Shown here: one piece after another, positions 3,579-34,358 of the stretch | How the letters are laid out: every line of letters begins with the position of its first letter | Numbering within the stretch: position 1 is the first letter of the stretch | Assembly: GCA_021613535.1 (NCBI GenBank) | Contig: CP075494.1 | Coordinates: 9,486,001-9,550,000, forward strand | DNA: 64,000 nt | Direction: 5' to 3' | Source: Adineta vaga | Lineage: Eukaryota; Animalia; Rotifera | Position numbers and translations under genes: made by a program | The notes under the pieces: model-generated | What the model was told of the DNA's origin: nothing | The model's input: only the letters and a program-made list of their open reading frames with translations | The model's database searches: none

Positions 3579-5687
3579 TTAATTTCGACGATTTACTGCT
3601 GGAACATGAAGATATCCTCGTTGACCATGATATGAATTATTATTCGATTGTCGTTGTGAATGATGATGTCTATATGAATTTCCACGATATCCATATGATT
3701 TCGTTGATGAACCTGATGGTGAAGACTAGAAGAGAAGTTTTTGATTAGTAAATGAATTTTTAACATTTAAAAACATACCGATCGATTAGAATTCATCGTA
3801 GTATTATTTCGATGATGTGGATGATTATATACATGATATTTTTGATAATGTTGAGAATCGTTAACAAATAAATGTTCATATTCATAATGATATGATTCTT
3901 TTAAGTAAAGTATATTCATTAATAATAATTCTCGATCTTCATGTGTTAGACAAACAGTACTTTGTTGAATAACATCAGCTAAATATTCGAAAAATAACAA
4001 ACATAATCGAGCATTTATTAAATCAGCTTGATCAATTTGATTCGAATCATATTTCGAATTCAATAATTGACTTTGTAAATATGATCGATGTTGAAATATT
4101 TCATTGACATTATTCGTTATATGTAAATTACTGATAATTGAAGAAGGTAAGAAATGTGTCGCTACATATTGGGCAATAACATGTATTTGTTCTGGACTTG
4201 TCTTATAATCAATGCAAAAACGTGAACACATATAACGTTGCATATGAATCATAATTGCAATATCATAAGGTTTATAATTTCTTGCTAATAGATCACAATA
4301 TTTCTAAAAGAAAAACAAAAGATTGAATTTTATAGTTCTTTGTTTTTTTTGCAAAGAATTGAAATACTTACTAATAAACCTCCACCACGAATTGTTTCAG
4401 GTTCATAAGTACAAATTAATTTATGATTTAAATGATGCATTGCTTGATGTACATCTTTGTAAGCTGAATAGACTTCACTTAATAATGGTACGGGCAACAA
4501 AATCTCTTTTTCTATCACTGATGAAGAAAAGACATGATCATCATCTTCATTCGTTGAATCATCAGCATCAACTTCAATTCCATCATCAACATCTTCATTG
4601 ATGGAAATTTGAAATTGTAGTGATGAATCAGATTGATTATCATCATTTGTAGATTCTGATGGTTTCGATGAATGAGAACGAGATTCCGATGATGCTAAAA
4701 CAAAATATACAGGTCAATGATTTGTTATTATAAATAAAGAGGAAATCTGAATTAACTTTTAAGAAGATTAAATCGGAAATCAGTTTTCTTTTGTTAATCT
4801 ACTAGACAGTTATGTGTAAACAACATCTACTTACAATTATTTTTCTCTGCTTTAATCGTTGTTATTGTTGCTAATGTTTGACATTGAATAGGATTTTCCT
4901 GTTCAGTAACGCTAGGTAAAGACGAGGGTGCAAAAAATCCGAATTGTAATGGACTTGTACTTGTATTCGTATGAGAATTTATTGGTTTTTTAAGAATTGT
5001 TACTCCATTGATAGCTTCAATAACTAAACTTTTCGTTTGAATTTGTGTTGTTATTGATTCAGGATTGATTTTTTCGAAAAGTAATGGTTTAAGATCGATT
5101 TGAAATGAATCAACGCTAAATTGCCATTGACGTTTAAGATTTTCCACAAATTTCAATTCAAGATTTTGTCCTAATAAATTCTGTAATGATAATAATGCCC
5201 ATGAATCTTGATCAGATGTTATTTTAATATTCTTTTTTGAATAAGTATCAAGTACTGAAGCAATAAAATATTGTGTACATGATGCAGCATTTGGAATATG
5301 TTCAATTAAACATGAAGAAATAATGTATTTTATAATTGTCCATACATCACATAGATACGGTTCATTATTTGATGAGAATAATGTTGTTTGTTGCTGAGAT
5401 GATAAGGATGTTTTAATAAGAAAAAGAATATCAATATCACGATAGACAAAATCTGAATCATTTATAAGTACATAAGATGCAGCTCCGCCATGTAAACGAA
5501 TAGCAGATATTTCAATTGAATGTTCTCGTAATTTAATCAGAAGATCACGAAGAAAATCTTTTGGAATAATATGTAATGTTGGAAATGACGATGTTGGTGG
5601 CGAAGGATAAATAGGAATTGTTGGTGTTAGAACCCGTCGTAATTTATCATTTTGTTCAGGTGATAAATAAACTGGTGTAACGTGCAT
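3579..5687 (-). CDS. TENT5: Terminal nucleotidyltransferase 5 (FAM46 family non-canonical poly(A) polymerase), spliced
   Basis: RLHGGAASYVL..YRDIDILF NTase motif, DSWALLSL, LELKFVENLKRQWQFSVDSFQI, PETIRGGGLL, MQRYMCSRFCIDY. Confidence 0.92.
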
Positions 5688-10242: not shown

Positions 10243-12730
10243 ACGAAATCAATCATAACAACATAAACTCTTTTTCTCTTCTTATGTATTTTGTATGATG
10301 AGTATAGATAATTTATTTTTTTATATTAATCTTCTATAACGGTGGTCTGTGCGAGGATGCAATCAATCTATTTAGCTGTTCATTTTATTCATAATCTTAT
10401 ATTCTTCTTATTCTATTTTCTATATCTTCGTCGTTTTTTTTTGTTCGATCTCTTATTTTTCTGTGCATGAAATATGTATTTCGGGAAGGCATTCAATTGT
10501 TATCAGCTTTTTTCTTGTATCTGTGTCCTGTGTTATCGATATGACAATGTGGAATGTCTTCTTCTATTCCTGGTCATCCGATGGTACGGTTGAAACGATC
10601 ATGAACACTTTTGATAAACATAGAATGAGCAACTTGCAATGCAAATTTCGAATATTTAATGTTCGAAAGAAAAAAATTCTATTTAAAACATACAAAAAAA
10701 AAACGATTTAAAAATAAAAATCTAAGCTCCGGCCGATCTCTAAAATTATGTGTTATTTTCACGATGAAAGATTTGATAGATGATAAATATCTTCAAGAAT
10801 GACATCGGTCAGTAATCGAAAGAGTTAAGACGTAAACATCATTAAAATAATCCATGTGTAATATTGTTTTCGATTGCATCATAAAAAACGTCAAAATATC
10901 AATGTAAACAGAATATCCCTCGAATAGAGAAAAATAAAACAAAATTACTGCGTTCGTTTTGACAGCTCATCAGTAAGATTCATCTGTCAATCATTTTCGA
11001 GAAATAGAAATAGACGATGACGTCGTTCGATGATTCGAATATATTTTCTATTGTATGACTTTTTTTTTTATATATATTCGAAAACAAGAAGAAAAAAAAC
11101 AAGTATTTCGTTTTTGTTTTGTTCGAGAATATAAAGAAAATATGTAATTATAATTTCTCAAAGTTAATATATCTAATCATTCGATTAATCTTTGTCCTTT
11201 ATATAAGATTAATGTCCAATTCTATTGTTCGATAGATGAAGAAAAAACAAACATATTCGTTTATAGTTAGAATTAAAATAACAACTATTCATGGTTTGAT
11301 TATATATTCGAGCAATAATAATAACAATCAAAAAGGAACGAAACAGTTATTATTTTTTCCTATTAATATATTTGATAATTAGTTTCCTCGTCTTTTATAC
11401 TTGCGTATTTTTTCGCTACATCGAACTTTCGAAAGATAATTTTCATTCGTTTTCAATGTTGATTGCAATATTTATTACAAATCAATATAGAAAGTAAACA
11501 TTATGTTTACCGACCGTAGACTCTTTTTTATTATAATTATCACAATGAAGATCAAAAATTTTCTCATTCAAATTTCTAAACATGTACTTGAATAAAGTTA
11601 AAGACGCAAAATATCAATTCATACAATATATGACTGTTGATTTTGATGAGTAAATATAATCGTACACGTACGTTGAGAGAAAGAAAATCATTGAATATTA
11701 GTCATTATCTTATACACATCCATAAGGATAGAAAAATACCCGTAAGCCATGAACTTATCTATTGATATACTTGTTCGAACTAATGTGTATAATTACGAAC
11801 ATAAATCAAGTTAATTATTGATTTTGTACTTTTTTCTTATTCAACTTGATACGAATCAAAACAAGAAAATAATGATGACTTGTTTTTTTTTATTTTGATT
11901 ATTTTTCAAATATGAACTGTGTGATTGTACTGATTGTAAAGTGTGTAATTAAGTATGAAAAAATGATACGAATAGATTAAAAAATTTATTTCGTCAATAT
12001 GATGAGAATGATAATCTTGCATCATCTATTGACAATGTGTCTTATTTATTTCACTAGTCAATTCCATACTTACGAAAAGTCTACTTTACACGTCGTTCAG
12101 CGATTTCTTTGATAGATACTTTTTGACGAAATAAATATATTGATTGAAATCAGTATATCGATGTATTTATAACTCTAATGATGCAAAGCTGCACATTTGA
12201 CATATCGTTAATGATATATATCGACGTATACGTATGATTCAAATTTGGACTTATGTTAGTGGAAAATCGACAAAGATATTCGAATATCACTGACCGATGT
12301 AATGTGTCCATCCTTAAAGATTTAGAGTTCAAATATTAGAATGCGTAACAGAAATAAAATAGCAGTGTAAGAAAAAGTATGTTGTCTAATAGCTTAGTCT
12401 GATTCTAATCAGAAAAGATTATTTCGATGAATAAAAACAACGTAAAAGTTTACAGATGACGCTTTATGTCGATCTGATCGTTTCAGAAATTCTTTCAATT
12501 TTTCTCACTAATTCTACTCGTCACGATCTATCACTCTCAACAGCAATGTTCAACAAACATCAATTTATTCAAGAATAACATTTGCTGAAATTAACTGCAT
12601 TGAATACCTATGGCAACATAAAATCAATCAGTATGAAAGTTTTTTTAAACGTTTACACATGAAACGAAAACGAATTCAATGTCGTGCTGTTTTTATTTAC
12701 TAAAATCAATTTGAAATTCTTTCAAACATA

Positions 12731-21845: not shown

Positions 21846-24800
21846 TTAGAGAAGAAAATCATCTAAAGACCATGCTTGTAAGAAAATTGCATCCAAGGAA
21901 TATTGTTGCAATTGAGGAATAGCTTGACTTGCTTTTGCTCCATAACCAATCGCTAACATATAGGATATATTATCAGGATCAGTGTCAAAATTATCAGATC
22001 TTGCTAAAAGTGGAGTAGAACGAGGATTTTCTCGATGTAGTCGATGTTGTTCAAATTTTTCTTGTAAATATTTAAATTGATTTCGAAATCGACTATCATA
22101 ATATTCATTTGCTACTGTTGCTGATGATGATGATGATGATGATGTGGATGGGGTTGATAAGAAAGCAGATGGTGAAAGAGAAAAAAGATGTAGAACATGT
22201 TGATCATAAGCATGAACAATATGTAAAACTTGAATCGATGATGTTGGTTTAACAATAAGAATATGTCCTGTACTTAAACCGATGAATACCAACATTCGTG
22301 TTGGTAAAATTGAATCAACAGTTAGATCATTTGAATCATCTAAGATCAGAGTAATAAAGAAATGTATGTTATAAGAAAGAATTACCTTTAGATCGTCTGA
22401 GAATTTGTTCACAATCAAGTTGATTAGTCATACGACGAGAGAGATGACTCCAAATACATACCATACTTCCTAGAAGATATAATTTCAATAATTTTGAACT
22501 TCATATTAAAATGATTCTTTGAATCAAATATAAAAAAAGACATGACCTATACCTGTTTTCATTGCTGTCCATATTGAATATTGATAAGGTGAATCTTTTG
22601 ATGCACAAAGTAAATGTACAGCACTTGAACCTGATGTTAAATGATGTGATAATTGAACTGATAATTGAGCAGTACGAACATCAATAAGACGTAAATTTCC
22701 TAATGAACATCCACACCAAAGTTCCACACTGAAATCATTTATTGATTCATTTCAAAGAAAAGGAACATTAAGACTTACTTTCGACCACTTGCTGTTGGCA
22801 ATGCAAGAATTTTAAATGTTGGCAATGAAACATTTGCTACATAACGATAGCAAAGATCTGGAGCTGCGGATATTGAATTTCGAGATGGATGTAAAAGTAT
22901 CGATAGATCAATACTATATATGGAATTATCTGATAATAATAAAAAAACAACTGATGATTCAGTTAAACTTGTCATTTGTATTGGATGACCATTTTCTTGA
23001 TGATGTACTAGAAGAAATTGATTAATTTCTTGAAATGTTTGTGTGGAATAGATATGAATAAGATTTTGACGATCAGCAAGTAGAATTACATGATCACGTT
23101 GATGATAATAAATAGATCGTATTTCACATTTGCCAAGATTAATTATCTAAATACGAATTGTTTATCAAGATAAAAATTCAAAGATAAAAAATAGGATCGA
23201 TCAAACTTGTTGATTAACAGCATTAAATTGATCATAAGCAACAATAATGAGAGCTGATTGATCATCTTGTTTCGTTTGTCGAACAAACCAACAATCAGCA
23301 GTAGGAATACCAATACCATCATCATCATCATCACCATTATCACTTTCAAAATTTTCATTAACTATTCAACAAAATAGTTATAAAAGAGTTGAATAAATTT
23401 TTCTATTTACTATCTCGATATGAAACTGTTGCTAATGTATTAGAATCATTGAAATCATTTCGATGACCAAGTTCAATAACATCCATTAAATGTCGAAATT
23501 CGACTGAACTCGATAATCGATGAATATCTTTTGCTGATGGACGATCATTGGGATATTCAGACCAACAAGCAACCATTAAATCAAGAAGAAGTGTTGGAGA
23601 GGATAATTCCTACGAATAGAAATGAATCACTCGTTACATCGCGTGCGTCAGAATAGTATATCGATCTATAAATTTTTAATTACTTGTTCAGTTAATGATG
23701 GTCGCCAGCCATGTAGAATTAATTCTCTAGCATGATCACGTTTATTTCGACTGAATGGATGATTTAATGACAAACATTCATACATAAGCATTGAGAAAGA
23801 AAATATATCAGCCTTGAAAAAGAAAAGGTTTTTTTTTCTTCTCAAAGACTTTCAAAGAAAATTTAACCGACTTTTTCAGTATACAATTCATCACCAGTAA
23901 AACGAACAATTTCCGGTGCGATATATCCTTGAACAAAGTAAAAGTTGTAAATATTTCTCTTTCAAAAGATTTCTTTACCTTCTGTTCCAGCAAAACCTTT
24001 CGTACCTAATGAATAAACAGGTCGCAAGAGATAAATAATTTATATTCAAAACAAAACATCTTACCAATGGGTGATAAAACTCGACTAATACTAAAATCTG
24101 ATAGTTTAACTAAGACTTGTCCATTGGATGGTAAACGCGGTTGTGGCATATTCCACACGAGAATATTTTCAGATTTTAAATCCAAATATATTATATGATT
24201 ATTATGTAAATGTGCAATAGCACTGGCTATCTAAACACAAATAAAAGTATTAACGAAAATTAGAATAAAAAATACAAACTTGAATAATCAATTTCTGATA
24301 AATAGTAAAACCTAATTGAGTATTTGTTCGTTTATATTCCTTTAATATTGATTCAAGTGATCCCATAGGAGCATAATGTAATATTAAACTTAATGGATGA
24401 GTACATATACCTATTAATGGAACAATACTTGGATGTGAACCAGTTGTTAACAGACAAGATAGTTCCTGACGACAAGTGATATAAGCTTTACATGCAGCTC
24501 GTATTGGATTTCGTGTCCATTCTTTAGCAATATCTCGCTAAAAGATTGATTATGAAATCATCTGCTTTCTTCTGAGTCTGTTCAATCTTACCAAAGATAA
24601 TTTCTTTTCCGAATCTTCATCTCGATTTCCATTGTGTATTTGTTCGATGAGACCATTTGTAATCAATGGATCAATTGGTACAAATGCTTTACAAGCAAGA
24701 TCCACAGTAGACTAGATGAAATTAATATATAAAAATCAAACTAACATAATAATCTAACCCTATACGATGTCGCTGCAAAAACAGTTCCAAAAGTTCCTTG

Positions 24801-27800
24801 TCCGATTAATTTCTTCAATTTAATCACATCGAATGGTACAATAAAATTCTTCGATGTTAAATCAGCAAAAATCTAAAGATCCAAAATTCATCAAAACTTC
24901 TTCTTCTTCCAACTATTTCTCTTCGTCACTAACTAACCAAATCGGGTGCAATGATTTTCATGGGAATTTCTCCATGTTTTTCACATTTAATCTTCATTTG
25001 TTTTTCTACTAACATCATCAATGTTTCTAACCAAAATGTTTGACAAATATACTTTTCCGGTGAATGATTTTCATATAAACATTGATGACAAGGAATAAAT
25101 CGATTGACTAAATAATCTCCTTTTGAATTTTGTACAAATCGAGTACCCATTTCTGGATACCAATCTTCTAGTAAAGTATCAAAATGTGCCATTACTATTG
25201 TTAAAATACGTGCAATTGTACTCTGTTGAACAAGAAGTTCGATTATATATGGATTTGTTTCTTCAAGATTTGAATCAATCATCATTTGTAAATCACTTGT
25301 ACAAATAAGAATTTCAATTAATGTTCCTTGATCATTAAAAGGTAAAATTTGTTTTTTCTGTTCTTCATCCGTATCGAATTGAAAAATAAGATTTAAATAT
25401 GAATATGAAATATCATCATCATCATCACTTGTTGATGAAGTTAAATTAATTTGATTGATTCGTAGAAGACAACAATCATAATAGCGAAGTTCTAAACCTG
25501 TTTGACATACAATCCATGAACATTCAGCAAGAAGAATATTCTGAATTTTTTCATTCAATTGTGAATCAACAAGAAAATAGTTCGTAAATGTTTGTTGTAA
25601 TTGTTTATCTCCAAGTAAACGTGTAAATAAACGTGACCAAAAACAAGATGGTATAAAAATTAAATGATAAAAACGACGAATGTAAGGAAAAGATTGATTA
25701 TCATCTTTTTTTATACGTGCTAAATATTTCAAATGAAATGATTTTGCTTCCGATGGATGAGTAATTGAATGTAATTTGGAAGTTTCTTTAAATTGAATTA
25801 CACTTGAAGAAGATATGATCGATGCACGACAATGACTTGACTAAAATAGAAGAGAAAATGAACGACGATAAAAAAAATAAAAAGTTTTCAATTTACAATT
25901 GTATTTAAACTCAAATGAACAGGAAGCAATGGTGGAAAAATTAAATGTTGATTATCCCATGTAATTGCAAGATCAAATTTTTGTAACAAAGGAAGTAAAA
26001 TCGAAATATTATTCTTGACAAATACATTTGTTTCTTGAAATGTATTTGGTAATTCATTGATTTTCATCAATCCTAAATTGAAATATTAAAGTTTCAATTT
26101 TTCAACTTTATAAATTACCATGTCTAGCAAGACCATTGGTTTGCTCATGAGCGATTGATTGTGCTAATAATTCGGCAAGATATTGTGGATCAAGAAAATA
26201 ATAATTAGATAATAGAGTATCTTCAAAATGTAGAATAACTCCTAAAAGATATTCATAAAATGAATTTTGATTATTATGTTTTGTGTGTCGTACCATTTTC
26301 ATGCAACCATTTTGTTCCTTGTTGAACATCAACTGAATCACGAAATTGTACATGAATAGAGATATCTTTGATCCATTCTCTAAAAGAAGAAAACAAGATT
26401 ATTAAATCATTCTTCGTCGTCTATTTTACTCACTGATATTGTTTATCATTTAAGATCGAACTTTTCTTATTCAATCGATAGTCTTCTAATGCTTCTTCTA
26501 AATAAATATATTTCGCTGGTATTCGTTGTTGAAAAATCGTTTGATCTTTATTATTTGGTGCTAATAATTGTCCAGCAATATCATAAATTAATGTACAAAG
26601 TTGTTTGATATTATGACCTGTTTTACAACTTATTTCAATTGAATCAAGTACTTTCGGATAGCCTAATTTTTCACTTTGAGATGTATCAATAAATTGTTGA
26701 TAGATTAATGATTGAAAATTGTCGGATAATTGACGATAATTTTTCAATTTCACTATTTGATCATGATGTGTACCAACAATAATCACAGATGAACCTGGTG
26801 CAACAGTCTAAAAAAACACATTTTATATGTTTGATTATACAATCTGGTGTCGTTTCTATTGCAACAGATGATGGCGAGAATGTATGTTTTAATCAATGGG
26901 TATAGAATGAGGCCTTTTAGCTTGAGAGAATCTTTTCAAATATTCTTAATTATAAACTTTGTTTCTCTTTCTCTTACATTGATTCACTTCTACGTGTTAT
27001 TGTTAAAAGGTGACACATTCTTCCTCTCTCTCTCTCTCTCGTGCATTCATTATACTATATATACACACGAAGGTTCGTTATGTACTTCAATAAATTCTCT
27101 CTTTATGACAGTATAACCTTATTACACATAATCGAGAGAAGAAAAACAGAATTTAATATTAGTTTTACGGTGACTACATCGATCATGGATTGGAATTGTA
27201 TTTCAAAGTTTATTTTAGGTCTCAATGTCTGGTATACCTGTTAAATTCGTTGATGATCTGTTCACTAATGTATGCATGAAAAACTCTTATAGAATTGTAC
27301 ACAAACAAAAGAATATTCGTCTTTTGTAGATCGTCAGAAATCAAGTTAATGAATTAATCAATTTACCACAAATTCAAGAACTTTCGTATACAGATGATCA
27401 TGCAACGGAAAATTTAACTTATAAAATAATCGATATAGTGAAACATCTTGTTCATGGACATATTAAAGATAATTATAAAGTGATTATTCAAGTTATAACT
27501 TATCCGAAGAAATTACAAGACAATATTTTAATAATGAGTCAATGTTTATGGAATTCTCGAACTGATGATGTTCTCTCCTTAGAAATTGAAAATGATACAT
27601 TGAGAATTCTTGTTGTTATTCATGGACTTGCAGCATAGAAAAAAAAACATCAACTTACTTGAATATTTATGAGAATATTATGAATTGTATCAAATATATG
27701 TTCATTTTGATCGTATTCAGTCATTTTCCAACAGATTAAATAAAGTGTACGTCGTGTAAAAAAATATTGATAAATCGAATGAAATTCTCGCTGAAAAAGT

Positions 27801-30800
27801 CAAGACAATGATAGAATTCATCAAGATGGAGAATATTTAATATACCTGTCCGCCAAAATCCCAAACACGAAAAGTAATTGGACCTAGGGTTGTACGTGGC
27901 GTTTTCTCATAGGTCCACTCTGATATATCCAAAATTGGAAAATTACGAACGGTTGTAGATTTCTAAACATAATCGAATGAAATGTGTCCTATGCTAATCT
28001 TTACAGGATGAATAAGACATACTTTTCGTTGATTTTGTTGAGCATTATTCATATTTGTACTTTCACGTTTACAAACTTGAAATAATGATGTTTTTCCTGT
28101 TTGTTCATCGCCAAGTAACATTAATCTCATTTTATTGTAAATTTTTGTACTAAACATAGACAATTTAAAGAAATTTTCAATCGAAATTCAAATCTTACTC
28201 ATCACATAAACTTTTCATATAAGCAATAATTTCTGCTGTTCGATAATTATTCGCTATGAAAGAAGATAGGGGCTCTTTTGTTATATCAATCATAGCTGTT
28301 GATTGTGTACCAAGCATTTTGTTTTTCGACGTTGGAAATAAATCTAAAAGAATAAATATTTCAGATGTATTTTACAGATAAATGATTGTTTGTCTTGTTT
28401 TTCTTTATACAATAAATTAGGAAAAAACAAAAGAATATTGATCGATTAACATCATTTTATACTGCAATATCAAAACGAGTGATTTATGTTTATTATTGAA
28501 ATCTGACGAGAGAAATTCAATCAAGTTGTCTTGTTTCATTTTCTACACGATCGACCACAACCGTGAAGATCTAAATTCCATAATTTCTGCATTGAACCGA
28601 TTGATAATGGAATCTAGAAGAGAAGAAGAAAAAAAAACAGTTATATCTTTTCTTTTTCTCAAGTATTTTTCTATCTTACCTCTTTGAGAAGAGAATTATC
28701 TCGTAATATCAATGTTCCAAGATTGCCTAATAATGAAATACTTATTGGGATAGATACCAATTTATTTTGGCTTAAATTTAAACGAGTTATTGCCGGAAAT
28801 AATAACGATGAGCGTAACATTGTCATGTCCGTATCCGGCGATAGTTTTGATATTGACTACAAATTAATATAAATCTTATTGTCTGAAAAAAACAACATTT
28901 CACTTACTGATAATGTTAATTCTTCAATAAGATTATCACCAAGATTTAAATCATGAAGAAATTCTAGTTTAACATGTCGTCGATGTGGACAACATTGATC
29001 GGAATGGTCTGATTTCGATGATGGATTGAGTCCAATTGATAAATTAGCTGATGTTAGAAGTTTATGTCGAGATACTGATCGACTCCGACGTCGTTTTGCT
29101 GCATCTAATTGTGAATTTGTTTCTTTTAATTCTGGTCGATAACAAATATTTTCAGGCGAAATATTTTCATTATGACGATTTCTTCGATGTGATTTTTCTT
29201 TTCGTGATAATGATGATATTAATGATTCAGATAAAATACTAGATTGAAGACGATTAAATGATAGATCAAGCATTTTTAAACGTGGTGGATAGGAAGATAC
29301 ATTGGATGCATCGGTAAGAAGATTGTGTGAAAGATTTAAAGATGTTAAATATGGAACAAGACAACAAAGCATTGGCGGAAGAGTTTCGAAATGATTGTAA
29401 GAAAGATTTAAATTAGTTAAACGACTTGCCGTCGATGATGAAGAGGAAGAGGAAGAAGAAGATTTTGTATTTGGTCCTGATTGTTGATCATCATCTGTCG
29501 ATGGAGCAATATGATTTTGCCAAAGACAGAGACGTTTTACTGGCATGGATTGTAATGTAGATGGAGGAGAATTCTGATAGGTTATTTTTAATTTTGCTCG
29601 TCGTTCAATTTCATCATCATCGTCCGGTGATGGTGGCATATCATCTGTTGAAATTTGAACAAATGTGGTCGAACGAGGAGGAGCGGAAAGAGGAGCAGAT
29701 AGTGTCGAGAAATCTACAGTTGTTGCTGACGATGATATTGTTGGAGATTTAATATCAAGCATAGTTGGTTTAAGAGACGAAGCGAAGTTTGGTTGTGGAC
29801 GTAATTCACTTGCTGTACGATTTTGAGTTCCCGAATGTCGTGCTGATAATTCACAAAAAAAGAAGAAGAAGAAATTATAACAAAATATTTTTCCGATTGA
29901 AAGTGTTGCTTACATGTCATATGACGTCCAAGTTTTTCTGCATGTTTTGTCGAAACAACCGCTGGTGTTGGCAATTCTTTCAACGAATTATTAGCAACAT
30001 TTAAATCAGTCAGCATTGGTGCAGACCATATTTCAACAGGTAAATATTGAAGTTGATTATGAGCTATAAGATATACATATATTTTCTTATCTTATAAATC
30101 GTTGTTACTCTACCTGCATATGCTCTTTGTAACGATCGTATTTGAAACATAGCTGGTGGTAAACAAGTTAATGCATTATGTGATACATCTAATTCTACTA
30201 ATTGATGACATAACCAAACATTATTTCCATTTGGTAATTCTCCTAATTGATTATTCGAAACATTTAATATTCTCAATGAATACATTTGAAAAAGAAATGC
30301 TGGTAGATTTTCTAAGGAATTATCTGATAAATCGATACGTGTAATACAATGAAAGAGTAAATGACGATTAGTTGATGTTATATCTGATAGTTGAGTAAAC
30401 GTATCTTTATTAACAAATATTGACGCTTGAATAAACCATAGAGGATCAAGAGTTTTTAATGGACCATAATGATGCCATTGAATACCAACTGGTATTGATG
30501 GAATTGGTGATGATAATGGAATTTGAGTTGGTATTGTTGTAGGACGTGTAGAAAAACGATTTTTAATTTGTTCGAAACCTGTCGTTAGAATTTGATATCG
30601 TTTACTTGGGCGTCTTTTCAAAATTGGTTCCATAGAATAATTCGAGTCTGATATATTATTATTATTATCAACATTTTTCTCATCTGTTGTATTCATCCAA
30701 ATTTTTGTTAGATCAATTGTTGACCAAAATTTATCATCAAATGGATATAATACATTGGATGTTAATTGTCGTTTAGTTAATTTAAATTCATTGTCTTGTA

Positions 30801-33800
30801 GAACACGATATTTCAATAAATGACCAATAAGATATGATTGTTTGCAAGCATTATAAGCAAGAAATTCTTTGTCTGTTGCATGAGAATTAAGTAGATATTC
30901 AATCAAATGAATATGTCCAAGACGACAGGCACAGGAGAGTGGTGTAGAACGAGTAACAAAACATTGTTCTTCATTGGATACTTGACTGGCAATTTCTTCA
31001 TATGGTAAGTTTACATTAGCACCGTTTGAAACAAGTAAATAAACTAATTTGAAATTTTGTTGTTCAATAGCTTCATGTAATGCTGCTCGACCATTATTAG
31101 AATAGACATCAAGATTAAATGGACAAAATGATGACGTAATTTTCTGTAGAGTTGTATTAAAATCCGAAAGAGTAGTAATTGAACCTATGAAGAAATATCG
31201 AATGATCGTTTTCTTATTGAAAAGATATTTACTTTCGGAATTAAAATAACTATGAGTTGATCGACGTTTAAATAATTCAATTTCTTGAGCAGTTAATCCA
31301 TGAATACGAAAGGAAAGAAGATATTCTACAACATCAATATATCCACCAAGTGCAGCTAAATACAAGCTTGTTTGATCATTTAAATCTTGTGCTAAAAAAA
31401 ACAACATAAATATTTCCACGTCTTATATGTTTATAGTTTGTAAACAATTTTCTTCACTGAAATCTTGACAATGTAATTTAATACTCTTTCTAACAGAATT
31501 TAATCTCATGTATATTGTAACTGTATACGAATGTATATCAAGAGAAGTATTACACGAGATGAAAGTCTATGTCATCAAGGAAATCGTATCTTATCAGTTG
31601 TCTATATTGAGAAATCTATAGACTTAAAACTACTACATCAAACTTTTATTTCGAAGTTATACCATTGAGATTAAATGGAAACACGTAGGAACGTTGTAAA
31701 CGATCAGCAAAAAGTGAACAAGATGCGAATGGATAATTTGGATAAGTTAATAGAAGTTGTACAATTGCTAAATGACCTTGTGAACAAGCAGCAGCAAATG
31801 GAAGAATTTGTTCTAATGTTGCCACTGAGACTAAATGCGGAAAATGCTAAACAAAAAACAAAAAGAGAAATTCAAATAATCAATAAAGTTTATTATCTTA
31901 CAGTTAGAAGCATTTGAACAATTTCAAGATTTCCAATTCGACAGGCTATGTACAATGGTGAATAGGATGTTTGACGATGTGGTTTAGCAATAGCTCCATG
32001 TTTTAATAATAATTTCACTAAATCAACATTTCCCGTACGACATGCTCGATATAAAAAATTCAATGTATCACTTCCATTTGGACTAGAATTCAATACTGCT
32101 TTTGCATGAGCACCTAAATGTGCTAAACATTCCGCTGCTTTTTCAACATCACCATCAAAACAAGCATCGAGTAATTCTAAATAGGATAATTATTTCTTTG
32201 TTCGTTTGTTTCTCATTCACAAAACTTTACTCTTTTCCGTTTCTTGTCGAACTTGTTGTCGAAGTTCAATTTCATTCTGAATCATTTCTACTGTATCAAC
32301 TTTACGATTCATTTGTGCTAATGCTAATGATGTATCACCATGTTTATCTTTTATCGTTACATCAGCTTTATGAAATAGTAATAGAGCCAAAATTTTTTCA
32401 TTTCCCACTGCAGCAATTACATGTAATGGTGTCTAAACAAAATACATGAGAAAATAACTAAATAACAAAAAAATTCGATCTAAATTTCTAAGAATTCCTT
32501 TGTTAATTAAAAGTTTTGGAGTAGTCTTAGGAAATTGTAGACTTTCGAAAGTCTTTTTCATTCTTGTTAATAGAGGATATTTTCCTTGTTTACAAAAATT
32601 TCCACGAAAATCATCTAAATCTAAGGACCAGATCATCGCTCCAGCTAAACGTTCTTTCGCAATAAAACGACATTTTTGTTCGATTGATTGCTGATTATCA
32701 TAACCAACCCATTGATCATTTTTATATGCAAATGGTACTTGTTGTTCTCTATCATATTCTGTAGACCATTTTTGTTTATTAATCAAATCACATATTTCAT
32801 AATATGATAAAAATCCATTATTAGCGGTGTAATTACCCGATGAACCAGCACCAATCGATGGTGCATATGGTTTAACATCAGGATTTTTCTTTTGTGGTAA
32901 TTTAAATGTTCGTCCATACGTTCCAAGACCAAGAACAAGTTTCGATGATTGACATCCACCATCAATCCATGTATCGACAGTTGCTTGTTGATTTAAAAGA
33001 CGTTGTTGATTCGTTTCAGTTGAACGTGGATATAATGGACTATTAAAACCTATATACGAATTCCAACTACCTAAAAAATTAGAACGTTTCTTTTCGAACG
33101 AAAAAGAACTATTTTTGTTCGATTAAACAAACCATGGTAATCATAAGCCATGAGATTGACATAATCAACAAATGAACAAACGTTTTGTATATCGTATGCA
33201 ATTTCAGTTTTTGGTCGATAAGCTCCAACAGCTATTGTTAGTAGAAGTCGTGTTCGATTCGTTAAACGAGCTTCATTTTGAAATTCCATTCGATAATCAC
33301 GAACCATCGAAGAAAAACTACGTCGATCAATTTCATTTTCTGGAAATTCCCAATCGAGATCTAAACCATCAAATCGATATTTTCGTAAATATTTAATCGT
33401 ATTTCGTACAAATTCTCGTCGTATTCTTTCATGTTGAAAAACTTGTCGAAATTGTGTAGTATTGACTGTTGCACCACCCAATGTTAATAACGTTTTCAAA
33501 CGTCGATTTTTACTTTTTAATAAATAGATTTGTTCATACAATCCTTTCGATATAGTCGATTTTGTTTGATTATTAACTTTAATTGGTATGAATTCAATAT
33601 CATTGAGTTCAAATGGACTTGGACTACGAGTTACAAGATCAATATTCGCAAATGCATAGTATAAATGTGTACAAAGCGTTGGATCAATATGTGATGGATC
33701 AAAATATCCAATACCTTGTCGATATTGAGACCAATTTGTAAAATAACAACCGCGAACAAATTGTTGACTATGTCCCGAATGAATAAGTATTACTAGTAGT

Positions 33801-34358
33801 ATTAGTAATATACATCTTACATACATGTTGATTTCGTTTTCTTATGAGAAAAATATGTCTGTTAGTTTTAACTTTATATCTATACTTCCTTCTTCTTCGA
33901 TCTATGTAAATAGCAAACAACTGTTTAAATAGAAAACGAAAACCTTTGCTATCGAAAGAAGACATTCCGATGAAAAAAAATGTACTTTCGATAAGAAATG
34001 AATCTATTCTTACTTGATAATCATAACGTTCACCAGCTTGAATATTTAAATCAGCACCATGATCAATGAGTGCCATAATAAATTCCAAGGATGAATCGAG
34101 AACTTTTGTATCATTTTGCAGTGTAGCTTGTGCAGCAGAAATACATGCTGTAAGTAAAGGTGTACAACCAAAACGATCTGTTGCATCGATATTATTAATT
34201 TCATCACCTGTAAGAAGATCCTACTCAGGAAAAAGAACCTTGAATTTACATAGCTTTTTTTCGTAGAATTTTACTTTGAGAAGATCAACATTTAAATATA
34301 ATGCAGCTTGATGCAGAAGTTTTCCTGGATAATTATCATCGTCATCATCGTTATTCAT
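21846..34358 (-). CDS. LRRK1: Leucine-rich repeat kinase (Roco; ANK-LRR-ROC-COR-kinase-WD40), LRRK1/Lrrk/LRK-1 type, many exons
   Basis: YPGKLLHQAAL N-terminus, ankyrin repeats, LRRs, ROC LMLLGDEQTGKTSL..VWDFGGQ..IIVGTH, COR FWSRLFTRLL..DTLLEDWYPEMGTRFVQNSKG, kinase GQGTFG..IIYLDLKSENILVW..DFSISR..APE, WD40-like tail. Confidence 0.93.
27225..27638 (+). CDS. Tctex-1-domain (dynein light chain Tctex-type) protein nested antisense in LRRK intron 26808-27658; exons 27225-27269 and 27330-27638
   Basis: MSGIPVKFVDDLFTN|IVRNQVNELINLPQIQELSY..NYKVIIQVI..ILIMSQCLWNSRTDD....EN....LVVIHGL matches the Tctex YK..VQV..SRCLWD..TD pattern; clean 60-bp GT-AG intron. Confidence 0.8.
32433..33826 (-). CDS. GH18 chitinase (2 exons), signal peptide and hydrophobic C-tail, nested on the same strand in LRRK intron 32433-34013
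   Basis: CYFTNWSQYR, LCTHLYYAFA, FDGLDLDWEFP catalytic motif, VNLMAYDYHG|SW, KLVLGLGTYGRTF, QWVGYDN, GAMIWSLDLDDF. Confidence 0.96.

What the first reader, a model, noticed from the sequence alone, without database searches (positions are those of the whole stretch)
32433..34013. Chitinase nested on the same strand in an LRRK intron, with its stop codon doubling as the host 3' splice site
Seen: LRRK exon 2 ends ...GERYDYQ|GTAAGA (donor 34013) and exon 3 starts TPLHVIAA at 32432, which restores an ankyrin repeat in phase 0. The 1581-bp intron holds a complete 2-exon GH18 chitinase in the same orientation. Its last codons TTT GTT TAG end exactly on the acceptor AG (32435-32433). The T-rich codons of its hydrophobic tail (RIFLLFSYFLMYFV, GPI/TM-like) are also the host polypyrimidine tract. 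Inference: the chitinase has no 3' UTR of its own, so its UTR must run into LRRK exon 3 or beyond, and LRRK splicing and chitinase mRNA formation are mutually exclusive on one molecule. Same-strand nesting with a shared stop/acceptor is rare.
Basis: partly seen in the sequence, partly recalled or inferred. Interest (0 to 1): 0.85.

Follow-up and report, generated by a model that had tools for sequence, protein, structure and literature searches.

The report
Chitinase gene nested inside LRRK intron
In this bdelloid rotifer a complete chitinase gene lies on the same strand inside a 1.6-kb intron of an LRRK-type kinase gene and ends on the very TAG that supplies the host's 3' splice site, and at least seven rotifer lineages share this overlap, so it is old and real, though no RNA data could be obtained.

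Summary
Host exon 2 ends at 34014 (donor GT 34013-12). A two-exon GH18 chitinase runs from 33826 to 32433. Its stop, TAG 32435-32433, is the last three bases of a 1581-bp phase-0 intron, and host exon 3 starts at 32432.

Comparative data support the nested-gene reading:
- Two rotifer contigs have the same exons 2 and 3 separated by an ordinary 57- or 69-nt intron at the same position, so this is one gene.
- Host exons 2+3 give dN/dS of 0.03-0.23.
- The stop/acceptor coincidence recurs in seven distinct lineages. Two Rotaria species have earlier stops, so the coincidence is dispensable.
- The homoeologous block on C2, and its Rotaria socialis counterpart, keep the chitinase and a second nested gene (Tctex-1) in order but have lost LRRK. 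Nesting therefore most likely predates the bdelloid genome duplication.
- A TATA/initiator-like block upstream of the chitinase is shared by nested and host-less copies, which argues for the chitinase having its own promoter.

The 3' UTR must enter host exon 3; the polyadenylation site is not known. The scan has noted other same-strand nested genes elsewhere in this genome. Verdict: a real and conserved new variant of gene nesting, of moderate interest.

The parts
34275..34358 (-). Host (LRRK-like) exon 1, MNNDDDDDNYPGKLLHQAALYLNVDLLK, phase 0
   Evidence: the same start peptide is seen in Rotaria (P0003) and in L018, L019, L021 and L022.
34014..34220 (-). Host exon 2 (69 codons, ankyrin), ending GERYDYQ before the donor GTAAGA
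   Evidence: Ank_4, weak. It is 84.6-89% identical at protein level in 10 other loci. The donor is conserved.
32433..34013 (-). Host intron 2, 1581 nt, phase 0, holding the whole chitinase coding sequence. The other introns measured in these two genes are 54-62 nt.
   Evidence: The orthologous intron is 69 nt in L021 and 57 nt in L022, without a chitinase.
33895..33932 (-). Candidate chitinase core promoter: CTATTTAAACAG (33932-33921, TATA-like) and GCTATTTACATAGATCGAA (33913-33895, initiator-like)
   Evidence: The alignment shows the block conserved in nested copies (L015-L018, L024) and in host-less C2-type copies (own C2 in L010, R. socialis L023). Its function is inferred.
33133..33826 (-). 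Chitinase exon 1: signal-peptide-like N-terminus and the first half of GH18 with DGLDLDWE
   Evidence: PF00704, E 8.4e-45, profile positions 4-184.
33071..33132 (-). Chitinase's own intron, 62 nt, phase 1, GT..AG
   Evidence: The Pfam profile is continuous across it. It is absent in the L019 lineage, where the chitinase is a single ORF.
32433..33070 (-). Chitinase exon 2 including the stop codon
   Evidence: PF00704, E 5.5e-35, profile positions 186-317.
32436..32477 (-). Chitinase hydrophobic C-terminal tail RIFLLFSYFLMYFV (GPI-signal-like); the same bases are the T-rich end of the host intron (branch-site/polypyrimidine region)
   Evidence: Homologous tails are seen in 6 other lineages and in C2-type copies. 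GPI anchoring is inferred, not tested.
32433..32435 (-). TAG: chitinase stop codon and host 3' splice site (T-A-G|exon 3)
   Evidence: conserved in 7 lineages.
32231..32432 (-). Host exon 3 (TPLHVIAAVGNEK...), completing the ankyrin repeat. It is necessarily also the start of the chitinase 3' UTR.
   Evidence: Ank, E 7e-8, starting at profile position 4. It is 78-87% identical in other loci.
32177..32230 (-). Host intron 3 (54 nt) with AATAAT at 32194-32189: candidate polyadenylation signal for the chitinase mRNA
   Evidence: AATAAA or AATAAT lies in intron 3 in 5 of 5 chitinase-bearing lineages examined and in neither L021 nor L022. This is weak evidence, because these are AT-rich introns and L021/L022 are GC-richer.
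23403..32176 (-). Remaining host exons: ankyrin, LRR, Roc, COR-B and kinase. The 3' limit was not delimited.
   Evidence: Pieces of the Rotaria orthologue carry ANK_LRRK2, LRR, Roc, COR-A, Pkinase and Beta-prop_LRRK2.

Best explanation
This is an ancient host/nested gene pair. An LRRK-type ROCO kinase gene (ankyrin-LRR-Roc-COR-kinase) has its second intron enlarged from about 60 nt to 1581 nt by a complete metazoan-type GH18 chitinase gene on the same strand. The chitinase has a signal peptide, an intact catalytic motif and a GPI-signal-like tail.

The chitinase is a transcription unit of its own. It starts from a TATA/initiator-like promoter roughly 80-120 nt downstream of the host donor. Its reading frame runs to the last base of the host intron. 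Its T-rich tail codons therefore also serve as the host's branch-site/pyrimidine region, and its TAG stop is the host acceptor. As a result the chitinase mRNA must carry host exon 3 as 3' UTR. Its end probably forms in or just after exon 3; an AATAAT/AATAAA in host intron 3 is the best candidate. LRRK pre-mRNAs, started upstream at exon 1, splice the whole chitinase out.

The overlap is best read as a frozen accident held by double constraint: the AG by host splicing, the T and the open frame by the chitinase. It does not look like a necessary regulatory device, because two Rotaria species moved the stop 82-126 nt upstream and kept both genes.

What is shown: the anatomy, the conservation, the reality of the host intron, purifying selection on the flanking exons, and the loss of the host from the homoeologous block. 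What is inferred: use of the chitinase's own promoter, the 3' end position, and the GPI anchor.
For: - Anatomy and domains.
- The host intron is real. L021 and L022 have exon 2 and exon 3 separated by 69 and 57 nt at the same phase-0 site, with GTAAG...YAG.
- Splice sites are conserved. The donor (G[ED][RHK]YD[YL][QKR]|GTAAG) and acceptor (YAG|ACACC) are kept in all 9 loci where they can be seen.
- Host exons 2+3 give dN/dS of 0.03-0.23, whereas the first 60 nt of the intron are only 32-42% identical.
- Without splicing, the peptide following exon 2 is not conserved: 74 extra codons in the window against a stop after 6 codons in R. magnacalcarata.
- The stop coincides with the acceptor in 7 lineages whose exon 3 DNA is 81-96% identical.
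- The order ARF-like GTPase / host exons 1-2 / chitinase / rest of LRRK holds in Rotaria sp. Silwood1, R. sordida, R. magnacalcarata and in metagenome rotifers.
- Homoeologous block: own C2 and R. socialis have ARF / chitinase / Tctex-1 in the same order but no LRRK exons.
- The chitinase tree separates nested-type and host-less-type clades (SH-aLRT 86 and 87).
- The promoter block is shared by both types.
- In AV20, chromosomes 2 and 5 are homoeologous, and tetraploidy predates the bdelloid families (PMC8494291).
Against: - There is no transcript evidence of any kind.
- Annotators of three Rotaria assemblies did not join exons 1-2 to the rest of LRRK. They called a separate 99-104-aa ankyrin gene, or fused it to the chitinase.
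- No canonical AATAAA follows the stop in the window within exon 3. The intron-3 hexamer could be chance; I estimate about 0.27 per AT-rich intron.
- The promoter is inferred from conservation only.
- The direction of change in L021/L022 (loss versus never gained) is not rooted.
Confidence: 0.75

Rival explanations
1. Operon-like processing. The chitinase mRNA is cut out of the host pre-mRNA by spliced-leader trans-splicing to an acceptor just upstream of its ATG, rather than being started at a promoter of its own. On this reading, host cis-splicing and chitinase production would truly compete on each molecule.
For: Bdelloids trans-splice a 23-nt leader onto more than half of their mRNAs (Pouchkina-Stantcheva and Tunnacliffe 2005, as cited in PMC1925144). 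AG dinucleotides preceded by T-rich runs lie 14-35 nt upstream of the ATG in the window. The gene lies on the same strand as its host.
Against: The upstream TATA/initiator-like block is conserved in C2-type copies that have no host gene upstream; their neighbour is a divergently transcribed ARF gene. Those copies must therefore start transcription themselves. The candidate trans-splice acceptors are not conserved between lineages.
Confidence: 0.1
2. There is no nesting. Exons 1-2 (34358-34014) form a separate small ankyrin gene, as annotated in Rotaria, or a relic. LRRK then starts at or after 32432, and the three genes simply lie in tandem.
For: Gene predictions for R. sordida and R. magnacalcarata call separate 99- and 104-aa ankyrin products. 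No RNA data are available here.
Against: In L021 and L022 the two exons are 57-69 nt apart with canonical splice sites and matching phase. The ankyrin repeat is split exactly at the junction: the Pfam Ank match on exon 3 begins at profile position 4. Conservation stops at the donor. The protein after read-through differs between species. Exon 3 begins without a start codon.
Confidence: 0.05
3. The overlap is a regulatory switch. Chitinase 3' end formation in exon 3/intron 3 and host splicing or elongation compete, so that expression of one gene lowers the other. Selection for this coupling, and not mere double constraint, would then keep the stop on the acceptor.
For: The coincidence is kept in 7 lineages despite indels in the tail. 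An AATAA[AT] hexamer lies in host intron 3 in all five nested lineages examined. Nested genes are known to cause premature polyadenylation and isoform changes in their hosts (PMC3192792; PMC11694760).
Against: R. sordida and R. magnacalcarata lost the coincidence through earlier stops, yet keep intact chitinase and host exons. The host-less C2-type chitinase functions with an unrelated 3' UTR of its own. Double constraint alone explains the conservation.
Confidence: 0.1

Closest known systems
Host/nested (intronic) protein-coding gene pairs of metazoans, as catalogued in Drosophila and mammals (e.g. PMC11694760; OMP in CAPN5, PMC6549253)
   Same: A complete protein-coding gene with its own promoter sits inside an intron of a larger gene. 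It lies in a 5' intron that is much longer than its neighbours. Same orientation occurs about as often as opposite orientation in mammals.
   Different: Here the nested coding sequence uses up the intron to its last base. The transcription unit therefore cannot be contained in the intron: its 3' UTR must overlap a host coding exon. The stop codon and tail codons double as host splice signals. The pair is conserved across bdelloid lineages, and the nested genes outlived the host on the duplicated chromosome.
Same-strand (tandem) overlapping genes and intronic/composite-exon polyadenylation
   Same: The upstream unit's 3' UTR runs over sequence that is exon in another mRNA on the same strand. 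Cleavage at a site inside a host intron is the proposed end.
   Different: The overlapping partner here is not the next gene but the host that encloses it. The polyadenylation site has not been observed.
Dual use of bases as codons and splice signals in compact viral genomes (e.g. influenza A segment 7, M1/M2)
   Same: Bases near a 3' splice site are both coding sequence for one product and cis-acting splice signal for another.
   Different: That case is viral, with one promoter and two products of a single transcript. Here there are two unrelated cellular genes and probably two promoters. It was not tested.
Other same-strand nested genes noted by this scan in the same genome (BEN-domain gene in a TPR-like intron, s1-489503; two genes in an ABCA intron, s1-502187)
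   Same: Same genome, same-strand nesting in an enlarged intron of a genome whose introns are otherwise tiny.
   Different: A shared stop/acceptor is not reported for those cases. The flanking complementary boxes proposed for the BEN case were looked for here and not found.

Membership tests
GH18 chitinase (Pfam PF00704), metazoan chitotriosidase/AMCase-like | Full-length match to the GH18 domain profile | tested here: met
   exon 1 matches profile positions 4-184 (E 8.4e-45) and exon 2 matches 186-317 (E 5.5e-35). The nearest non-rotifer hits are vertebrate and mollusc chitinases at 34-41% identity.
GH18 chitinase (Pfam PF00704), metazoan chitotriosidase/AMCase-like | Catalytic DxxDxDxE motif | tested here: met
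   FDGLDLDWEFP is present in the exon 1 translation. The motif is also kept in all rotifer homologues read.
GH18 chitinase (Pfam PF00704), metazoan chitotriosidase/AMCase-like | Chitinolytic activity, secretion, GPI anchoring | not testable with these tools
   The only evidence is sequence: a signal-peptide-like N-terminus (MYVRCILLILLVILIHSGHS) and a C-terminal hydrophobic tail after small residues.
LRRK/ROCO kinase (host gene) | Domain order ankyrin - LRR - Roc - COR - kinase on one strand | tested here: met
   Ank (1e-13), LRR_8 (1.5e-8 and 4.8e-8), Roc (weak, 0.0044), COR-B (5.4e-7) and Pkinase (weak, 0.0072), on successive minus-strand ORFs from 31419 to 24006. Pieces of the orthologue in R. 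magnacalcarata carry ANK_LRRK2, Roc, COR-A, Pkinase and Beta-prop_LRRK2.
Host/nested gene pair (strict sense: nested transcription unit wholly inside one host intron) | The flanking exons belong to one host gene and are spliced to each other | tested here: met
   This was tested comparatively only. There is an ordinary 57/69-nt intron at the same site in L021 and L022. Donor, acceptor and phase are conserved. dN/dS is 0.03-0.23. No RNA reads were available.
Host/nested gene pair (strict sense: nested transcription unit wholly inside one host intron) | The whole nested unit, UTRs included, lies inside the intron | tested here: not met
   The stop codon occupies the last 3 nt of the intron, so any 3' UTR lies in host exon 3 or beyond. 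This makes the pair a hybrid of nesting and same-strand overlap.
Host/nested gene pair (strict sense: nested transcription unit wholly inside one host intron) | The nested gene has its own promoter | tested here: inconclusive
   A conserved TATA/initiator-like block is shared with host-less paralogues. No transcription start data exist.
SL trans-spliced operon (downstream cistron) | Spliced leader joined at an acceptor upstream of the ATG on a transcript continuous with the upstream gene | not testable with these tools
The promoter conservation argues against dependence on host transcription.

The most novel reading that the evidence does not exclude
Because the chitinase coding sequence ends on the host acceptor, every chitinase mRNA must be finished inside host exon 3 or intron 3. 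If that cleavage competes with host splicing and elongation, the locus would be a conserved built-in toggle between a secreted or GPI-anchored chitinase and an LRRK kinase, at least as old as the split from Rotaria. The coding tail would then be selected simultaneously as membrane-anchor signal, branch-site/pyrimidine tract and terminator. That would be a cellular example of the triple-use sequence economy otherwise seen in viruses.
Probability: 0.15. Interest if true: 0.7.

Novelty: new variant of a known kind. Interest (0 to 1): 0.55.

Why it matters
Nested genes are common, but they are normally thought of as passengers that fit inside an intron. Here the passenger's coding sequence is welded to the host's splice signals, and the weld has held across at least seven rotifer lineages. 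After the bdelloid genome duplication one copy of the locus lost the host and kept both passengers.

That gives a natural experiment with three states:
- nested with overlap (the window and six other lineages);
- nested without overlap (Rotaria);
- host-less (C2-type), with a passenger-less state (L021/L022) alongside.

Comparing these states could show how transcription, splicing and polyadenylation of overlapping same-strand genes are kept apart in a genome with very short introns.

The finding also exposes systematic annotation errors. In the public Rotaria assemblies LRRK is split into fragments, there is a spurious small ankyrin gene, and there is an ankyrin-chitinase fusion.

Tried and rejected
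- **Representative search.** The search of protein representatives with host exon 3 (68 aa) was meant to find gene models or transcripts spanning the exon 2/3 junction. It was swamped by generic multi-repeat ankyrin proteins and gave nothing usable.
- **Transcript-derived ORFs.** The search for homologous proteins with the 451-aa host exon returned only genomic exon-sized ORFs and no transcript-derived ORFs. Among chitinase hits, no full-length spliced Logan-derived protein of the nested type appeared. Records of this genome, or of one very near it, are left out of these tools.
- **Bridging helix.** A search for complementary boxes bridging the long intron, as proposed for another nested gene in this genome, found only short AT-rich inverted matches of chance quality.
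- **LRRK remains on C2.** A search for decayed LRRK exons found none by tblastn or tblastx.
- **Horizontal transfer of the chitinase.** Rejected: its nearest non-rotifer relatives are animal chitinases, and it has a spliceosomal intron.
- **Gain versus loss in L021/L022.** The LRRK tree is unrooted and compatible with either. ARF exon 1 resembles the nested-type copies (87-90% against 61-63%), but only over about 30 residues.
- **Joined spliced models.** These were not sent to any search or folding tool; exons were searched one by one by reference. The only joining was a local concatenation of gapless exon 2 and exon 3 codons for dN/dS.
- **Literature.** Searches found no report of a nested gene whose stop codon is the host acceptor. 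That is absence in the held library only.
Full report
**1. What is in the sequence**

Reading the minus strand gives the following layout.
- Host exon 1 is 34358-34275 (MNNDDDDDNYPGKLLHQAALYLNVDLLK).
- A 54-nt intron follows, 34274-34221.
- Host exon 2 is 34220-34014 and ends GERYDYQ. The donor GTAAGA follows at 34013.
- Host exon 3 starts at 32432 (TPLHVIAAVGNEK...) and ends at 32231. A 54-nt intron follows, 32230-32177.

Both sides of the 1581-nt gap are in phase 0. Together they complete an ankyrin repeat, because the Pfam Ank match on exon 3 begins at profile position 4.

Inside the gap, on the same strand, lies a GH18 chitinase.
- Its ATG is at 33826, and exon 1 runs to 33133.
- It has a 62-nt phase-1 intron, 33132-33071.
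- Exon 2 is 33070-32436, and the stop TAG is 32435-32433.

The two exons match Pfam GH18 back to back, at profile positions 4-184 and 186-317 (E 8e-45 and 5.5e-35). The catalytic DGLDLDWE motif is intact. The TAG is the last triplet of the host intron. The 14 codons before it (RIFLLFSYFLMYFV) are the T-rich end of that intron.

The host continues downstream with ankyrin, LRR, Roc, COR-B and kinase ORFs. It is therefore an LRRK/ROCO-type kinase.

**2. The genome**

The window is C5:9486001-9550000 of a 100.8-Mb, six-contig assembly. The closest public relatives of its genes are bdelloid rotifers of the genus Rotaria. Six chromosomes, with chromosomes 1, 2 and 3 homoeologous to 4, 5 and 6, is the published structure of Adineta vaga AV20 (PMC8494291).

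**3. Are exons 2 and 3 really joined?**

The answer therefore rests on comparison.

Two contigs from ENA assembly ERZ26165376 (L021 and L022) carry the same host gene next to the same divergently oriented ARF-like GTPase gene. In them exon 2 and exon 3 are separated by only 69 and 57 nt, with GTAAG...YAG, at exactly the same codon boundary. They have no chitinase. This shows that the position is an ordinary intron of one gene.

Other lines of evidence agree.
- Across nine loci where the junctions can be seen, the donor and the acceptor YAG|ACACC are conserved.
- Host exons 2+3 evolve with dN/dS of 0.03-0.23, while the first 60 intron bases are 32-42% identical.
- If exon 2 is not spliced, the peptide after it is not conserved. 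The window gives 74 extra codons; Rotaria magnacalcarata stops after six.

The public Rotaria annotations break this gene up. They give a separate 99-104-aa "ankyrin" product, several LRRK fragments, and in one partial contig an ankyrin-chitinase fusion (P0003). I regard these as prediction errors caused by the nested gene.

**4. Is the stop/acceptor coincidence more than chance?**

Yes. The order ARF-like gene / host exons 1-2 / chitinase / host exon 3 onward is found in the following loci:
- Rotaria sp. Silwood1 (L015, truncated);
- R. sordida (L016);
- R. magnacalcarata (L017);
- environmental rotifer contigs L018, L019/L020 and L024.

In L018, L019/L020 and L024 the chitinase ORF ends ...TAG|ACACC, exactly as in the window.

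I then scanned metagenome contigs with a degenerate pattern taken only from the first 38 nt of exon 3. The scan was therefore blind to what lies upstream. It returned eight contigs. All seven with enough upstream sequence show a chitinase tail ORF running into a TAG that abuts exon 3. The eighth (L029) holds only 13 upstream bases and shows the TAG alone.

Grouping by exon-3 identity (81-96% between groups) gives seven distinct lineages with the coincidence: the window, L018, the L019 group, L024, L025, L028/L030 and L032. The tails differ in length by one to three codons and in sequence, yet all run to the acceptor.

R. sordida and R. magnacalcarata are the exceptions. In-frame stops lie 82 and 126 nt upstream of the acceptor. 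In R. magnacalcarata a recognisable remnant of the tail lies behind the stop. The overlap is therefore ancestral and long-lived, but it is dispensable.

**5. Age and origin**

The chitinase has a 77% identical copy on C2. tblastx of the window against 26 kb of C2 shows a collinear block:
- the genes downstream of LRRK (window about 18.7-21.0 kb);
- a Tctex-1 gene (window 27330-27638, plus strand; Pfam E 2.6e-9);
- the chitinase;
- the ARF-like gene;
- genes at 43.8-48.2 kb.

No LRRK exon is detectable on C2, and LRRK is single-copy in the genome.

In the window, Tctex-1 lies antisense in the host intron between the first Roc exon (28163-27963) and the next exon (26786-26430). The host thus carries two nested genes. 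Both survive, in order and orientation, on the homoeologous chromosome that lost the host. R. socialis has the same host-less arrangement, ARF / chitinase / Tctex-1 (L023).

A chitinase tree rooted with other animal chitinases gives two clades. One of 22 sequences contains every nested copy. One of 12 sequences contains the two host-less copies. Support is moderate (SH-aLRT 86 and 87).

The simplest history is as follows. The chitinase and Tctex-1 were already nested in LRRK before the bdelloid genome duplication. One duplicate then lost LRRK before this lineage and Rotaria split. Tetraploidy is reported to predate the bdelloid families (Hur et al. 2009, as cited in PMC8494291). If so, the chitinase-free intron of L021/L022 is most likely a secondary deletion within the intron.

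Some evidence bears on that direction, but none settles it.
- In favour of loss, the last ~20 intron bases of L021 (CTTCGATGATGTTTCTTTAG) resemble the chitinase tail end of L024 (TTTCGATCTTTCTTTAG).
- Also in favour, ARF exon 1 of L021/L022 is of the nested type.
- Against certainty, the LRRK tree is unrooted and cannot decide.
- Synonymous sites between L021/L022 and the others are saturated.

I put loss at roughly two to one over late gain.

The chitinase is a native animal gene, not a horizontal acquisition.

**6. How it probably works**

Upstream of the chitinase ATG, an alignment of nine copies shows a conserved block. In the window it reads CTATTTAAACAG at 33932-33921 and GCTATTTACATAGATCGAA at 33913-33895. 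Further conserved motifs lie upstream of it in the other lineages.

The block is shared by the host-less C2-type copies of this genome and of R. socialis. Their upstream neighbour is a divergently transcribed ARF gene. Those copies must initiate on their own, so the block is most simply the chitinase's own TATA/initiator-type promoter. The nested copy therefore probably also makes its own primary transcript. It also weakens the alternative that the chitinase is released from host pre-mRNA by spliced-leader trans-splicing, although bdelloids do trans-splice most mRNAs (PMC1925144).

At the 3' end, the coding sequence leaves no room for a UTR inside the intron. The mRNA must therefore include host exon 3. 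No AATAAA occurs in the window's exon 3. Host intron 3 carries AATAAT (32194-32189). AATAAA or AATAAT lies in intron 3 in all five nested lineages examined and in neither L021 nor L022. Because these introns are AT-rich and L021/L022 are GC-richer, this is only a hint, and I give it about one chance in three.

The C2-type copies have an unrelated 3' flank of their own that is conserved between the two genera.

No helix bridging the long intron was found.

**7. Comparison with what is known**

Host/nested gene pairs are common. In mammals, same and opposite orientations are about equally frequent (PMC11694760). This scan has noted two other same-strand nested cases elsewhere in this genome. Nested genes can disturb host splicing and polyadenylation (PMC3192792).

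Three things are unusual here:
- the nested coding sequence is fused to the host's 3' splice signals, so the pair is part nesting and part same-strand overlap;
- this state is conserved in many lineages;
- the passengers outlived the host on the duplicated chromosome.

I found no report of a stop codon shared with the host acceptor in the held literature.

**8. Verdict**

The RNA-level consequences remain untested.

This is a new variant of a known kind. Interest is moderate (0.55). It is a clean and evolutionarily deep example with built-in natural controls, but its most likely explanation is a frozen accident maintained by double constraint.

Two limits on method should be stated. Joined spliced models were not submitted to any search or folding tool.

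Noticed in passing
window 27330-27638 (+), within host intron about 26787-27962; also L017 12636-13176, L021 13618-13905, L023 12005-12640, L010 2315-2620: A Tctex-1 (dynein light chain) gene is nested antisense in the LRRK intron that splits the Roc domain. It is conserved in Rotaria and in L021. It is retained on the homoeologous C2 block and in R. socialis, where the host LRRK is gone.
   Followed up: partly
G000:C2:10941000-10966999 (L009-L011) versus window 18.7-48.3 kb: This is a collinear homoeologous block in which all LRRK exons have vanished, while both genes nested in it and the flanking genes remain. The distance from chitinase to Tctex-1 shrank from about 4.9 kb to about 1.2 kb.
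   Followed up: yes
L015 10001-11307; L016 3880-4337 and 6084-14067; L017 4357-4729, 6390-10995, 11439-12408, 13363-16251: Public Rotaria gene models break the LRRK orthologue into several pieces. They call exons 1-2 a separate 99-104-aa ankyrin protein, or fuse them to the chitinase (P0003). These are likely annotation artefacts caused by the nested genes.
   Followed up: partly
L019 10001-11302; L018 1587-2930; P0035: The chitinase's own intron varies between lineages. It is absent in the L019 lineage, where the gene is a single 433-codon ORF. It is present but open in frame in L018 and in the P0035 lineage, where prokaryotic gene callers read straight through it. It is 62 nt and closed in the window.
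   Followed up: no
L010 about 3620-3700 (-) and L023 about 11185-11250 (+): The host-less C2-type chitinase copies share a conserved stretch of about 60 nt just after the stop (TCGAATCTCACTCGAAAAATA...ATCAAACAAATAGAT). It is unrelated to anything downstream of the nested copy and is possibly their own 3' UTR/terminator element.
   Followed up: no
L028 about 300-421 and L030 about 540-664: In this metagenome lineage the nested chitinase has an in-frame loss of about 20 codons (the QGKYPLLT...linker region) just before the tail. It still runs open to the TAG at the acceptor.
   Followed up: no
L022 656-2041: A questin-oxidase-family gene (PF14027), a family not typical of animals, lies a few kb from the ARF/LRRK locus in the chitinase-free contig. 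It is a possible foreign gene of the kind common in bdelloids.
   Followed up: no
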